Shown here: positions 11,804 through 15,782 of the stretch, in pieces
Position numbering within the stretch: position 1 is the stretch's first letter
Layout: each line of letters starts with the position of its first letter
Source: Setoptus koraiensis
Taxonomy: Eukaryota > Animalia > Arthropoda
Assembly (NCBI GenBank): GCA_048013815.1
Contig: CM106586.1
Span: forward strand, 6,634,001 to 6,698,000
Length of the DNA stretch: 64,000 nucleotides
Direction: 5' to 3'
Translations under genes and position numbers: made by a program
The notes under the pieces: generated by a model
The model's input: only the letters and a program-made list of their open reading frames with translations
Told to the model about the DNA's origin: nothing
Databases searched by the model: none

Positions 11804-13025
11804 TTATTTTTTATCACAGTCGTCTTCAAAAATGGCAAAAGTTGGTTTGGGCTTCGGTGCAGTGGTAGTAGGTCTTGAGCGTGACCTCATGGGTCGTCTT
11901 GACAATCCTGAACTAGCTTCAGTTATCTTGTCTGATACTATCTCATTTTCTCGGCCCACTTTACCAACACTTGATACACGTTGCGAAGTGGGTATGGGTT
12001 TTGGTAAAATAGTCTTCAGAGGCCCCACAGTATCTTCATTCTCGTCTGCAAAGACATCGAGTGGGACCTGTTTCTCTCCGGGTTTTCTGTCGGTGAGTTT
12101 CGGCTTACTTTTAACAGCTACTTTGATGCCATTAACAATCTTGGTCTGACTTTTAAGACCACCAACATTCGCCTGGTCTACAGCAGATCCTGTTCTATTG
12201 ATAGATACTTTGGCCTGATCATTCTTAAGTTTAGTCATTTTCAAGCTTTGTAGGGCCTTCCTTATGCCAGCCTGCTCCATAATGGTATTGGCATTGGGGC
12301 CGGTATTATCGTTGGTATTCTGTTCGAATTGTTCACTCTCGCCATTCATAATAGCTTTGAACAGACGATACTGAAGTTGATCGCGGGCTTGCTCTAAACT
12401 GTCTATTGGCGATGCCCTGTTCTTTATTCCTGTTTCGATTATCTCATTAGCCTTCTTGACGTTGAGTCTGATATCGTATTGCCAGGACCAGCGTAAATAG
12501 AATGACGCTATGAGGGAGGAGATTGAGTTAGCATACATAAAGCTAAATATTTCTAGGGGTTCGCTGCAGAAGCGTTTGAATTTCATGAAAATATTGAACA
12601 ATCGTTCGTCCTGTTTAAACTCTTGGACATCGTGAAATTGTTCAATACAAGTCTCCACAGCCTCTGCTATGATTGAATTGTCGCCACCCTCAGGACAATT
12701 TTGTTCTAGCCAATCAATATAATCGTGCCACAGGGTGAGCTTATCGCTCTGCGTTATGTCTGCCTGGTCTAACTGGGCTTTGAATTGACTATATATTACA
12801 GAACAAGGTAAGAAAACAACATGTATGTATGGATAAGTATGTGGAGTAATGTTAGGGTTGCTCAATTGACTGTCACTACACTTACCTCTCGCGTTCTTTC
12901 AATCTGTTCTCTCTTTCTTTGTGGTTGTCGGTGAGTTTCAGTGCCTCAAACAAATCGTCAATCTTTCTTCCCTGAGTCAGTGGTTGTATGTTCTCCTTGC
13001 AGTGATCCCAATCTAGATAAGCCAT
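11804..13025 (-). CDS. mad3: Mad3/BubR1-like spindle checkpoint protein without kinase domain, 2 exons, about 374 aa
   Basis: Exon 1 13025-12886 (MAYLDWDHCKENIQPLTQGR, the KEN1 box), intron 12885-12789, exon 2 12788-11804 with a Mad3/Bub1 TPR region (LWHDYIDWLEQNCPEGG, FKQDERL, FSFMYANSI, GIKNRASP), ABBA-like LDVFADE and FAIFEDD, and RENE at the KEN2 position. Confidence 0.88.
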
Positions 13026-13254
13026 TGTGTGATGATGAGGTTTAACTATAACTAATTAATAACTTCAACTAATGTCTATTATAAGGTGGGAACAATGATA
13101 GTAATAGTGAATGAGTGTCGATAAGAGTTGTATCATGTCTCTATAATGCTGGATAAACTCGTGGTAAATCTTGTCGGGTAAAACTAACCGTTTCGTCGCG
13201 CATAAACAAAACTTCGGTTCAACTTGTTCAAGTCTAGTTTACGCTTGCGCTGCT

Positions 13255-13270
13255 AACTTGGCGCCAAGTT
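13255..13270. promoter_or_regulatory. Perfect 16-bp palindrome AACTTGGCGCCAAGTT (double E2F-like TTGGCGC) in the mad3/SLC25A32 bidirectional promoter
   Basis: The palindrome is read directly and lies between divergent ATGs at 13025 and 13430. The regulatory role is inferred. Confidence 0.5.
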
Positions 13271-13429
13271 CAAATAAGATTTTTTTTTCTTCTTTTTATG
13301 CTGATTATTACAAACACGCAGAAATCATTGTGATGTGGAAACACGCTTCCAAGACACATATCTATACTACATACACATGTATTTACACATATAGAATTGG
13401 TTGATCTTTCACCCAAATAACCAACCAAA

Positions 13430-14329
13430 ATGAGCTACGAAAATCTTCTAGCTGGCATATGTAGTGGTATTACATCAACATTGGTCCTACATCCATTGGA
13501 TTTACTTAAAGTGAGATTTGCAGTCAGTGATGGTCAATCAAAACTAAAACCTAATTACAGGAATATTGGTAACGCACTAACAACCATTGTTAGAGATGAA
13601 GGCTTTAGAGGTCTCTACAAAGGAGTTGCCCCCAATTGTTGGGGCGCCGGCACATCATGGGGACTATATTTTCTATTTTATGAAAAAATTAAACACTGGA
13701 TGTCGAAAAGTAATCACAACCAACCACTCGGACCAATCAAACACATGACAGCAGGTGCTTGCGCAGGTTCACTATCAGCCGTTATAACGAATCCTATTTG
13801 GGTTGTTAAGACAAGATTATGTCTCCAGTATGGCAATTTAAATATAGCAGGAGGTGTCAATCAGTTGCCTGAAAGCAAAAGATACTCAGGCACAATAGAC
13901 GCATTTAGAAAGGTTTACAAATTTGAAGGTATACCAGGCTTATATAGAGGATTCCTGCCTGGTTTATTCAATGTCTCACATGGTTCCCTTCAGATGATGG
14001 CATACGAAGAAATGAAGAAGGCTTACATAAAACGCAACAATCTACCTAATGATCATCAGTTTAGTCAAACGCAATATTTAGTTTTCGCCAGCTTAAGCAA
14101 GATATTTGCCTCTTCATTAACTTATCCATTTCAAGTGGTACGCGCCCGACTTCAAGATCAGCACTCAAATTATACTGGCCTAACTGATGTTATTAAGAGA
14201 ACTTGGAGGTACGAATCTTATTTAGGATTCTATAAGGGTTTTCGCGCTTATATATTGCACGTAACGCCTAACATCTGTATAGTGTTCTTTGTTTATGAGG
14301 CAACAACTCATGCACTCAAGAATGGTTGA
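13430..14329 (+). CDS. SLC25A32: Mitochondrial folate/FAD carrier, unspliced isoform A (299 aa)
   Basis: Three carrier repeats: HPLDLLKVRFAV, NPIWVVKTRLCLQY, YPFQVVRARLQDQH. Also WGAGTSWGLYFLFY and GLFNVSHGSLQMMAYEE, typical of SLC25A32/Flx1. Confidence 0.95.
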   Translation: MSYENLLAGICSGITSTLVLHPLDLLKVRFAVSDGQSKLKPNYRNIGNALTTIVRDEGFRGLYKGVAPNCWGAGTSWGLYFLFYEKIKHWMSKSNHNQPLGPIKHMTAGACAGSLSAVITNPIWVVKTRLCLQYGNLNIAGGVNQLPESKRYSGTIDAFRKVYKFEGIPGLYRGFLPGLFNVSHGSLQMMAYEEMKKAYIKRNNLPNDHQFSQTQYLVFASLSKIFASSLTYPFQVVRARLQDQHSNYTGLTDVIKRTWRYESYLGFYKGFRAYILHVTPNICIVFFVYEATTHALKNG

Positions 14330-14538
14330 ACAAGCTCACTCTAGTTGAGTCACAGACTAGTTAATTAGTATCACGAAAAGAGAGCTGACTAATTCTAGAT
14401 TTATTAGCAATCCAAAGTATATTTATATTCGTAATCGAGTATATACACACACATATATATATATACAAATACAATATATAACATCCCTCCAATTCATTAT
14501 TGTTATTGTATTGCCCTGTCTATAATCATCATCACTAG

Positions 14539-14668
14539 GAACGAACGGATTAGTGGATTCTACAAAGGATTTCAGCCGTCACTAATTAGAGTTGTTCCCG
14601 CCAGTGCCATCACATTTACTATCTACGAAGGTATCCTTAACGGGATCCGCAGAGAAAGAAGAGATTGA
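14539..14668 (+). CDS. SLC25A32: Alternative duplicated 3' terminal exon of SLC25A32 (isoform B C-terminus)
   Basis: Internal donor GAG|GTACGA (exon end 14208, phase 2) and acceptor CATCACTAG|G at 14538/14539 are phase-compatible. The exon encodes R-NERISGFYKGFQPSLIRVVPASAITFTIYEGILNGIRRERRD*, a second copy of the carrier helix-6 segment. It is absent from the ORF track. Confidence 0.85.
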
Positions 14669-14875
14669 CAATAATTTAGCTCTATCCTCACAAAGAGCCG
14701 CATCCGATTTGCGCCTATAGAACCCATATATTAATGGCGTGGACGATAACAATATAATATAAAACCCAACATGCCTGAACAAGATAGTTCTGTCCTCAGA
14801 CTCAACGTTCAGGAAATGTCGAAAATTTTTCACCCTCTTCTCAAGATTTTCGACTCGCTTTATAAGCGAATTCAT
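14582..14875 (-). CDS. Small single-pass membrane protein of unknown family (97 aa)
   Basis: Basic amphipathic N-terminus (LIKRVENLEKRVKNF), TM-like HVGFYIILLSSTPLIYGFY then RRK. A TTACAG acceptor lies 9 nt upstream of the ATG. The last 87 nt overlap the SLC25A32 alternative exon on the opposite strand. Confidence 0.45.
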   Translation of the reverse strand: MNSLIKRVENLEKRVKNFRHFLNVESEDRTILFRHVGFYIILLSSTPLIYGFYRRKSDAALCEDRAKLLSISSFSADPVKDTFVDSKCDGTGGNNSN

Positions 14876-14975
14876 CACTAATCTCTGTAATTCAAATTAT
14901 TCAAATAGTGATTGTAGTTATTATAGTGGTATAAATAAAGTTGTTGTTATGATTCCTTATCCGTATTAATCCGTA

Positions 14976-15170
14976 TCAATTGTCAGCGGTCTTGGTTGGT
15001 TTTGCCACCTGATCACCAGATATAGATTTGGCGTTTTTTTCGGCTATTTCTTTCAAAATTGGCGAATATATGTAATAGGCAATAACGGTTTGCATAAACA
15101 TAAAAACGCCTATGGTCGTATTAGATACTCCTCTTAGGCGCCGTATTCTGGTGAACTTGTTACGGAACAT
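14976..15170 (-). CDS. Microprotein (64 aa), PIGBOS1-like single-pass membrane protein
   Basis: MFR..RRLRG, a hydrophobic segment ending YYIYSPILKE, then a charged tail. This matches the recalled PIGBOS1 layout (MFRRL...GGVYIFQPVFEQ). Similarity judged by eye only. Confidence 0.45.
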   Translation of the reverse strand: MFRNKFTRIRRLRGVSNTTIGVFMFMQTVIAYYIYSPILKEIAEKNAKSISGDQVAKPTKTADN

Positions 15171-15782
15171 CACGTGTTTAGATCATGCTCGATCTATATG
15201 ATTAAATGATAGATTCTGACAACAAGTAGACTGATTGTCTTGAACTTGAGATTGATTTGTTAATAGGGTCGTCGGCGAATGAGACAGTGATAACCTTGTT
15301 TCTGTATCATGTTAATTTCAATTGAAAGAATCACATGTATGATATCTCATGCTTGTTTTGTTTATTTGCGAGCGCCCTCTTCCATCGATGGTCTCCACTA
15401 GAGTTGGCGCGCACAACATCATCCATTTTTGAAGAACGCAAAAAGTTCTTGCGAAAAATCTGATAGAAACTTATACAACTTACAATCAACAAAATTGATC
15501 ACCCGTCACGAGTATTAGCCAGTCAATTATGATCATGCGGATGGGTTCGGGATGAAATCTAGACAGCAACAAAATTTTTGATTGACGCAGAATTCTTGTA
15601 AACAACTATATTTTTCAAAGAAAACTGTAACTATTCCTACATCTTAGAAAATGTCCTAAAAGATCATCATTCTGAGAATTGGTTACATCTCAACAGCCAG
15701 CTGCCGATTGGCGCGAATTATTACTATTTGTATAATCATGGTTCAATCTTAGACTCCTGAAAACATGTGGATTGTATTTTCT

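What the first reader, a model, noticed from the sequence alone, without database searches (positions are those of the whole stretch)
14200..14668. Hidden duplicated terminal exon swaps helix 6 of the mitochondrial folate/FAD carrier, with Arg vs His at the substrate contact
Seen: the intronless SLC25A32 ORF contains an internal donor (GAG|GTACGA, 14208/14209). A phase-matched acceptor 330 nt downstream opens a paralogous copy of the last 40 aa. Isoform A ends YESYLGFYKGFRAYILHVTPNICIVFFVYEATTHALKNG; isoform B ends NERISGFYKGFQPSLIRVVPASAITFTIYEGILNGIRRERRD. Known: H6 carries the usually basic contact point 3 of the SLC25 substrate site, and vertebrate SLC25A32 has LIRVTPA there. Isoform B keeps the Arg and isoform A has His. 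Inference: a splice/polyadenylation choice could produce two carriers with different substrate preference (folate vs FAD or other) from one gene. I recall similar HVTPNIC / RVVPA variants among insect orthologs, which would make this an ancient arthropod switch, but I have not verified it.
Basis: partly seen in the sequence, partly recalled or inferred. Interest (0 to 1): 0.8.

Follow-up and report, generated by a model that had tools for sequence, protein, structure and literature searches.

The report
Two alternative tails of mitochondrial folate/FAD carrier
A mite gene for the mitochondrial folate/FAD carrier (SLC25A32) makes two proteins that differ only in the last membrane helix, by splicing or not splicing one 330-base intron; the same pair of tails is found in flies and in an annelid worm, so the switch is old, and what it does to transport is unstudied.

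Summary
ORF 13430-14329 (+) is an intronless SLC25A32-type carrier. An in-ORF donor AG|GTACGA (14208|14209) joins acceptor CTAG|G (14538|14539) in phase. This replaces the last 39 residues (tail A, His at contact point III) with a paralogous 42-residue tail (tail B, Arg).

Exactly this junction stands in transcript-derived contigs of two public runs, and unspliced contigs stand beside it.

Donor, acceptor and exon B are kept in four other eriophyoid-like mite genomes, with dN/dS 0.02-0.07 where computable. A fifth has lost both the GT and exon B.

The same fused layout occurs in Drosophila pseudoobscura and a sciarid fly. The annelid Dimorphilus has the two tails as separate tandem terminal exons behind one phase-2 donor. 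A hemichordate has only tail B.

Databases already hold both isoforms of one gene for Aceria and Ceratitis. Separate Anopheles species carry RefSeq X1 (tail A) and X2 (tail B) entries. I found no paper that describes the pair.

The residues that tell the two classes apart fall on one helix face, AAC positions 276/279/283/287, which lines the pore. A difference in substrate or kinetics is therefore plausible, but nothing here tests it. No second poly(A) signal was found.

Verdict: a real, ancient, under-described alternative last exon. Its function is inferred only.

The parts
13430..14208 (+). Common body of the SLC25A32-type carrier: helices 1-5 and the start of repeat 3b (259 codons plus 2 nt), with no intron.
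   Evidence: ORF. Three Mito_carr repeats, E 4e-67. Best named relatives are SLC25A32 / mitochondrial folate transporter of mites, spiders and ticks.
14204..14214 (+). Dual-use site TGGAG|GTACGA. It codes W-R-Y-E of isoform A and serves as the 5' splice site (14208|14209, phase 2) for isoform B.
   Evidence: Sequence. Joint with GT..AG ends. The same donor is conserved in L002, L004, L009, L010, L001 as GTATGA, a sciarid fly and D. pseudoobscura.
14209..14329 (+). Tail A: helix 6 with His at contact point III (...YILHVTPNICIVFF...) and stop TGA at 14327-14329. It is read only from unspliced RNA.
   Evidence: Unspliced contigs X2 14180-14566 and X5 14288-14533. The A-type tail is conserved in 93 proteins. 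dN/dS 0.02-0.05.
14209..14538 (+). 330-nt intron removed to make isoform B. It contains tail A, its stop, and a TA/CA-rich simple repeat at about 14435-14480.
   Evidence: Joint 14206->14537, 'skips 330, GT..AG (cut +2)', in X2 and X5. No AATAAA or ATTAAA inside it.
14539..14668 (+). Exon B: one base that completes the Arg codon, then a 42-aa paralogous helix 6 with Arg at contact point III (...SLIRVVPASAITF...), stop at 14666-14668.
   Evidence: Mito_carr E 2.1e-8. The 628-nt contig of X5 runs 13882-14206 then 14537-14839. Orthologous exon in four other mite loci and in the Aceria tosichella protein P0041.
14669..14960 (+). Shared 3' UTR, with the only canonical poly(A) signal (AATAAA at 14934-14939).
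   Evidence: Contigs X2 14537-15040 and X5 reaching 14839. The exact 3' end is not determined.

Best explanation
This is a genuine, conserved alternative last exon of an SLC25A32-type mitochondrial carrier in an acariform mite; the nearest named relative is the eriophyid Aceria tosichella.

How the two proteins arise: the primary transcript runs through both tails to one distal poly(A) signal.
- Left unspliced, translation reads tail A and stops at 14329. This gives a 299-aa carrier whose helix 6 carries Tyr/His/Asn/Val on its pore face.
- If the in-ORF donor AG|GTACGA is used, the 330-nt intron is removed. That intron includes tail A and its stop. Exon B supplies a paralogous helix 6 with (Ser/Asn)/Arg/Ala/Thr on the same face and a longer basic C-terminus. 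This gives a 302-aa carrier of the vertebrate type.

Origin: the two tails come from a tandem duplication of the terminal exon that predates the arthropod-annelid split. In mites and flies the intron in front of exon A was lost. The junction AG + GTACGA (codons Arg-Tyr-Glu) itself serves as the 5' splice site.

Shown: the anatomy, the splice in RNA, the conservation, and purifying selection on both tails.

Inferred: the two isoforms differ in substrate selectivity or kinetics, because the class-defining residues line the translocation pore, including contact point III.
For: - Splice: the joint equals 14208|14539 with GT..AG ends, in contigs of X2 (short 57-nt contig, 27 nt on one side) and X5 (628-nt contig, 0 mismatches), with unspliced contigs in the same runs.
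- These runs are RNA-derived. They also lack the 97-nt GTAAGT..ATATAG intron (12789-12885, minus strand) of the neighbouring gene.
- Five mite loci keep donor, acceptor and exon B, with intron lengths 330, 397, 212, 434 and 244 nt.
- B-exon dN/dS is 0.02-0.07 where dS is computable; elsewhere dS is saturated.
- Natural control: L011 has TGGAA|ATACGA (no GT) and no exon B within 2.5 kb.
- Same-gene isoform pairs have identical bodies: Aceria P0026/P0041 277/277 and Ceratitis P0085/P0127 274/274.
- In Anopheles, RefSeq X1 of A. aquasalis has tail A and X2 of A. moucheti has tail B, which are different species. The A. christyi model P0103 fuses both tails.
- Layouts elsewhere: Dimorphilus has AA|GTAAGT followed by the A and B acceptors. 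The sciarid fly and D. pseudoobscura have TGGAG|GTACGAACG plus a downstream exon B.
- Class-specific residues: Y/H/N/C/V (97-100%) against N(S)/R(K)/A/x/T at offsets -10, -7, -3, -1, +1.
- The Arg aligns with the Arg of UCP1 SFLRLGSW.
- PMC7226361 places contact point III on H6 and lists positions 276, 279 and 287 as pore positions.
Against: - The kind of the runs is not on record ('?'), and only contigs were available. So there are no read counts, strand or 3' ends, and relative use of A and B is unknown.
- Both runs with the joint belong to one study and one organism label. The X2 joint rests on a single short contig with only 27 nt on one side, so X5 carries most of the weight.
- Unspliced contigs could in part be pre-mRNA.
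- No transport data exist for either tail in any species.
- The window's own tail B has diverged faster than its relatives (dN about 0.2 against about 0.1 for tail A).
- The tick locus shows no exon B within 10 kb, so the pair is not universal.
Confidence: 0.85

Rival explanations
1. The isoforms carry the same substrate(s). They differ in something other than the binding site: stability, membrane insertion, regulation, or interactions through the C-terminus. Tail A ends right after helix 6, whereas tail B has an extra, often basic, extension.
For: There is a consistent length difference. A-type proteins stop a few residues after the YE motif. B-type proteins continue with ...NVSHFLL... or, in the window...GILNGIRRERRD. 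SLC25A32 substrates have not been defined by direct assay (PMC7226361), so no substrate logic can be checked.
Against: The invariant class-defining residues are inside helix 6 with i, i+3, i+7, i+11 spacing, including contact point III. They are not in the extension, which is poorly conserved.
Confidence: 0.25
2. In this mite only one tail matters. Either the splice to exon B is low-level noise acting on a relic exon, or the unspliced form is merely pre-mRNA and tail A is not made.
For: Only contigs from one study show the joint. No quantitative data are available. Lineages exist that have lost B: L011 and possibly the tick.
Against: Both tails are under strong purifying selection among mites while synonymous sites are saturated. 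Donor and acceptor are conserved in five loci. Loss of the GT coincides with loss of exon B in L011, which implies the donor is maintained for B elsewhere. The spliced contig's depth is of the same order as the unspliced one. Both isoforms were recovered as transcript-derived proteins in Aceria and Ceratitis.
Confidence: 0.07
3. The joint reflects a genomic deletion variant or an assembly artefact rather than RNA splicing.
For: The run kinds are not on record, and the tool warns that a joined form present in DNA runs would be a DNA variant.
Against: The joint has exact GT..AG ends and preserves the reading frame into a paralogous helix. The same runs have another canonical intron removed in the neighbouring gene, and their coverage is patchy and exon-centred. 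The homologous junction is encoded in Aceria and Ceratitis transcripts.
Confidence: 0.02

Closest known systems
SLC25A3 (mitochondrial phosphate carrier) isoforms A/B from exons 3A/3B
   Same: One SLC25 gene carries a tandemly duplicated exon. The two versions are used alternatively and replace a membrane segment that lines the translocation cavity. PMC7226361 describes isoforms A and B and an exon-3A mutation in the cavity. That the two PiC isoforms differ kinetically is from my own knowledge (Fiermonte et al. 1998).
   Different: In SLC25A3 the exons are internal, near the N-terminus, and mutually exclusive between common flanking exons. Here the pair is terminal (helix 6). In mites and flies one version is fused to the body, so the choice is intron retention versus use of an in-ORF donor. 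The PiC pair is a vertebrate feature, whereas this pair spans arthropods and annelids.
Vertebrate SLC25A32 / mitochondrial folate transporter (MFT) and yeast Flx1p
   Same: The window gene is an ortholog by best hits. It has three Mito_carr repeats. Isoform B has the Arg-type helix 6 (LIRV-P-A...ITF) seen in deuterostome proteins such as Saccoglossus P0113.
   Different: Only the Arg-type tail is found at the Saccoglossus locus. To my knowledge this also holds in vertebrates. The His-type tail A (Y..H..PNIC.V) is an additional protostome form with no characterised counterpart.
Composite terminal exons / alternative last exons and exitron-like splicing
   Same: An internal 5' splice site inside a coding terminal exon is either ignored, giving a protein that ends in the retained sequence, or used to reach a downstream terminal exon.
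   Different: Here the two alternatives are paralogous. They encode the same structural element, both are under purifying selection, and the arrangement has lasted since before the arthropod-annelid split. The donor nucleotides are also conserved codons (Arg-Tyr-Glu).
UCP1 / ADP-ATP carrier arginine at contact point III (UCP1 SFLRLGSW; AAC position 279)
   Same: The Arg of tail B aligns with this arginine, and tail A puts His there. Contact point III on H6 is part of the proposed common substrate site (PMC7226361).
   Different: These are different subfamilies and substrates. The comparison only locates the residue. It does not predict what His does.

Membership tests
SLC25 mitochondrial carrier family | Three tandem repeats of about 100 aa matching Pfam Mito_carr (PF00153) | tested here: met
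   three stretches, E 4e-67, for ORF 13430-14326. Tail B alone matches profile positions 58-92 at E 2.1e-8.
SLC25A32 / MFT / Flx1 subfamily | Closest named relatives are SLC25A32 orthologs over the full length | tested here: met
   55-65% identity over 97-100% of the query to proteins that NCBI, UniRef or JGI name SLC25A32 / mitochondrial folate transporter, in mites, spiders, ticks and insects. No tree against other SLC25 subfamilies was built.
SLC25A32 / MFT / Flx1 subfamily | P-I-W in place of the usual P-x-[DE] of the second signature motif (from my own knowledge of MFT literature) | tested here: met
   The ORF reads ...ITNPIWVVKTRL..., as do all homologs shown. That this motif is diagnostic is recalled, not tested.
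SLC25A32 / MFT / Flx1 subfamily | Transport of folates and/or FAD | not testable with these tools
   No assay was possible. PMC7226361 states that even human SLC25A32 had not been characterised by direct transport assays.
Alternative last exons arising from tandem exon duplication | Two paralogous exons in tandem behind one donor, in the same phase | tested here: met
   phase 2 in the codon before [YNLF]-E in mite, fly, tick and annelid. In Dimorphilus both acceptors are ...cag|G TTG GAA GG.
Alternative last exons arising from tandem exon duplication | Both forms present in RNA | tested here: met
   spliced and unspliced contigs in X2 and X5 (contigs only; run kind inferred from removal of the neighbour's intron); both forms as database proteins with identical bodies in Aceria and Ceratitis.
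Alternative last exons arising from tandem exon duplication | Separate poly(A) site for the proximal exon | tested here: not met
   no AATAAA or ATTAAA between 14330 and 14538, only weak variants at 14468 and 14473; an unspliced contig continues across the acceptor. 3' ends cannot be read from contigs, so a weak site is not excluded.
Mutually exclusive internal exons (SLC25A3 type) | Alternative exons flanked on both sides by constitutive exons | tested here: not met
   Both tails end in stop codons (14327-14329 and 14666-14668) and no exon follows. It works like an MXE pair at the protein level but is not one.

The most novel reading that the evidence does not exclude
Protostomes have kept, for more than half a billion years, a one-gene switch that rebuilds the pore face of helix 6 of SLC25A32: Tyr/His/Asn/Val against Asn/Arg/Ala/Thr. 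On this reading the two isoforms carry different cofactors, for example flavin nucleotides versus folates, or another nucleotide-like cofactor. Vertebrates would have kept only the Arg form. If so, the natural isoform pair would separate the two activities disputed for SLC25A32 and show which pore residues select each.
Probability: 0.25. Interest if true: 0.8.

Novelty: new member of a known kind. Interest (0 to 1): 0.6.

Why it matters
What SLC25A32 transports (folate, FAD or both) is still argued, and direct assays were lacking as of the 2020 review PMC7226361. A conserved natural pair of isoforms that differ only in helix 6, with His or Arg at contact point III, would be a ready-made structure-function experiment.

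The layout is the same in Drosophila: internal donor TGGAG|GTACGA, with exon B about 1 kb downstream in D. pseudoobscura. Isoform-specific genetics is therefore feasible.

There are also practical consequences for annotation.
- ORF-based or single-isoform gene calls in compact arthropod genomes miss isoform B.
- Some gene models wrongly fuse both tails (Anopheles christyi, Cotesia, Trachymyrmex).

The site is also a clear example of codons (Arg-Tyr-Glu) that double as a 5' splice site after intron loss.

Tried and rejected
- Literature: six full-text searches and four papers read. Topics were CG8026, SLC25A32 splicing, insect carrier reviews, SLC25 intron positions and alternative last exons. 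None describes the A/B tails. The library lacks most subscription journals, so this is not proof of absence.
- Region-restricted word search with the annelid A tail gave only 12 candidates. It added Capitella (A-type) but cannot delimit the taxonomic range.
- Intron-identity control: global alignments of unequal-length introns gave meaninglessly high 'identity of the shorter'. I discarded it.
- dS is saturated for most pairs, so only 3 of 10 dN/dS values for exon B are usable.
- L001, the 95%-identical relative, ends in the intronic TA repeat 151 nt after the A stop. Its exon B cannot be checked, although its donor GT is intact.
- The tick locus shows no exon B within 10 kb. This may be loss or a long intron; undecided.
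- Owenia protein P0118 was not on record for a locus look-up.
- Saccoglossus has a weak A-like match (IKPNLCLVFNNY, E about 0.1) 16 nt after the donor. I judged it chance because there is no room for the first half of the exon.
- The Xenopsylla pair P0157/P0197 did not have identical bodies in my crude anchored comparison, so it is not counted as a same-gene pair.
- Structure prediction was not run, because the tool returns no coordinates and could not show side-chain orientation.
- Earlier notes of this scan had nothing on this locus.

Full report
**1. What is in the sequence**

ORF 13430-14329 (+) encodes 299 aa with three Mito_carr repeats (E 4e-67). Its best named relatives are SLC25A32 / mitochondrial folate transporters of mites (Aceria tosichella, 65%), spiders, ticks and insects. 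The window therefore comes from an acariform mite, probably eriophyoid-like. A Logan contig holds a 95%-identical protein (P0001).

Inside the ORF, TGGAG|GTACGA puts a GT at 14209, in phase 2 of an Arg codon. The intron is 330 nt. The acceptor tcatcactAG|G at 14538|14539 opens a frame that completes the Arg. It then reads 42 residues to a stop at 14666-14668.

That piece alone matches the second half of the Mito_carr profile (E 2.1e-8). It is 36% identical to the ORF's own tail.

**2. Is the splice used?**

Laying Logan contigs of four runs on 12800-15400 gave one joint: 14206->14537, 'skips 330, GT..AG (cut +2)'. That is exactly 14208|14539.

- In X5 it is in a 628-nt contig covering 13882-14206 and 14537-14839 with no mismatch.
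- In X2 it is in a 57-nt contig with only 27 nt on one side, below the 31 nt the tool asks for before a record counts as bridging. So X5 carries most of the weight.
- The same runs hold unspliced contigs (X2 14180-14566, X5 14288-14533).

The run kind is not on record. However, both runs also carry a contig whose loose end at 12886 continues at 12759-12788. This removes a 97-nt GTAAGT..ATATAG intron of the minus-strand Mad3/BUB1-like neighbour. These are therefore transcript assemblies.

X3 and X4 are the same data filed twice and show no joint.

Limits: contigs only, both informative runs come from one study, and there are no counts, strand or 3' ends.

**3. One poly(A) site or two?**

The only AATAAA between 14300 and 15100 is at 14934, after exon B. 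The intron has only weak variants, at 14468 and 14473. An unspliced contig crosses the acceptor.

The simplest reading is one transcript with one distal 3' end. The choice is then to splice (tail B) or not to splice (tail A, whose stop at 14327-14329 ends translation). A weak proximal site is not excluded.

**4. Conservation among close relatives**

Four other mite loci have about 70% protein identity and different synteny partners. All keep the donor TGGAG|GTACGA, an acceptor YAG|G and an intact exon B reading ...GFYKGLGPSLLRVVPASAITF.VYEKSL... Intron lengths are 397, 212, 434 and 244 nt.

Synonymous sites are saturated for most pairs. Where dS is computable, dN/dS of exon B is 0.02-0.07, like tail A at 0.02-0.05.

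L011 gives a natural control. Its Arg codon has become Lys (TGGAA|ATACGA, no GT), and no exon B is found in 2.5 kb downstream. Donor and exon B were lost together.

Aceria tosichella has two UniProt proteins with 277/277 identical bodies, one with each tail (P0026, P0041).

**5. Depth of the arrangement**

Among 208 collected homologs, 127 end in the His-type tail and 78 in the Arg/Lys-type.

| Species or group | Finding |
|---|---|
| Ceratitis capitata | both tails on identical bodies (274/274) |
| Anopheles | RefSeq X1 of A. aquasalis has tail A; X2 of A. moucheti has tail B (different species) |
| Anopheles christyi, Cotesia, Trachymyrmex | gene models wrongly fuse A and B, which shows the A-then-B order |
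| Sciarid fly, D. pseudoobscura | the mite's layout, down to TGGAG|GTACGAACG; exon B lies 4.5 kb and 1.0 kb downstream |
| Tick Rhipicephalus | exon A is still separate (CG|GTGAGT ... cgcag|GTACGAG); no exon B within 10 kb |
| Annelid Dimorphilus | one donor AA|GTAAGT followed by two tandem terminal exons, A then B, 400 nt apart, same phase |
| Annelid Capitella | has an A-type protein |
| Hemichordate Saccoglossus | same intron position but only exon B |

The duplication therefore predates the arthropod-annelid split. The one deuterostome tested shows only tail B.

The fused layout in mites and flies is most simply explained by independent loss of the intron before exon A. The junction AG+GTACGA (Arg-Tyr-Glu) then itself acts as the 5' splice site. 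This last step is inference.

**6. What changes in the protein**

I aligned 93 A tails and 33 B tails.

| Offset | AAC position | Tail A | Tail B |
|---|---|---|---|
| -10 | 276 | Tyr 100% | Asn 82% / Ser 15% |
| -7 | 279 | His 100% | Arg 76% / Lys 24% |
| -3 | 283 | Asn 100% | Ala 94% |
| -1 | n/a | Cys 97% | Ala / Met / Cys |
| +1 | 287 | Val 99% | Thr 97% |

The Arg of tail B aligns with the Arg of UCP1 ...SFLRLGSW.... That is contact point III, AAC position 279. The diagnostic positions are thus 276, 279, 283 and 287, which form one helix face. PMC7226361 places contact point III on H6 and lists 276, 279 and 287 among pore positions.

Tail A also ends just after helix 6, whereas tail B carries an extension. 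That the isoforms differ in substrate selectivity or kinetics is a reasonable inference from this pattern and from the deep conservation. It is untested, and which substrates are involved is unknown. Even human SLC25A32 lacked direct transport assays.

**7. Comparison and novelty**

The closest described analogue is the SLC25A3 exon 3A/3B pair. That case is also a duplicated exon giving two carriers, but there the exons are internal and mutually exclusive.

Formally, this case is an alternative last exon. In mites and flies it takes a composite or retained-intron form.

Both isoforms already sit in databases: UniProt pairs for Aceria and Ceratitis, and RefSeq X1/X2 entries in Anopheles species. 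The phenomenon is therefore annotated. I found no paper that describes or interprets it.

I rate it a new member of a known kind. Interest is moderate to high because it offers a natural handle on the unresolved SLC25A32 substrate question and is present in Drosophila.

Noticed in passing
window 11804-13025 (minus strand), intron 12789-12885: The upstream neighbour is a Mad3/BUB1-like gene (Pfam Mad3_BUB1_I on the syntenic gene in L001). It has a 97-nt GTAAGT..ATATAG intron that is removed in contigs of X2 and X5. This is what shows that those runs are RNA.
   Followed up: partly
L011:2340-4968: One related mite (protein P0031) has Lys instead of Arg at the junction codon (TGGAA|ATACGA, no GT) and no exon B in the 2.5 kb downstream. 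Donor and alternative exon appear to have been lost together.
   Followed up: partly
L004:4160-4340 (same in L005): Downstream of exon B lies a third, decayed copy of the gene's 3' end. It is A-like (...LRVTPNICIVFFVNETVTK) with frameshifts and altered key residues, so it is probably a pseudo-exon from a recent local duplication.
   Followed up: partly
proteins P0103 (Anopheles christyi), P0065 (Cotesia congregata), P0110 (Trachymyrmex zeteki): These public gene models join tail A and tail B in one 364-378-aa protein. They are annotation errors caused by the tandem paralogous terminal exons.
   Followed up: partly
window 14435-14480: A TA/CA-rich simple repeat lies inside the intron. Logan contigs break there, and the contig of the 95%-identical relative L001 ends in the same repeat, which hides its exon B.
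   Followed up: no
window 14540-14665 versus L002, L004, L009, L010: The window's tail B has diverged about twice as fast as its tail A (dN about 0.2 against 0.1). It differs from the otherwise near-invariant mite consensus at several positions (F-Q for L-G, T-I for V-V, G-I-L for K-S-L), while keeping R, V-P-A-S-A-I-T-F and Y-E.
   Followed up: no
L012:17674-17709 (Saccoglossus): There is a weak A-like match (IKPNLCLVFNNY, E about 0.1) only 16 nt after the penultimate exon's donor. It is probably chance, but a relic of an A exon in a deuterostome is not excluded.
   Followed up: no
L008 (Rhipicephalus sanguineus): The tick has exon A as a separate exon, and no exon B was found within 10 kb downstream. 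This is either lineage-specific loss of the Arg-type tail or a very long intron.
   Followed up: no
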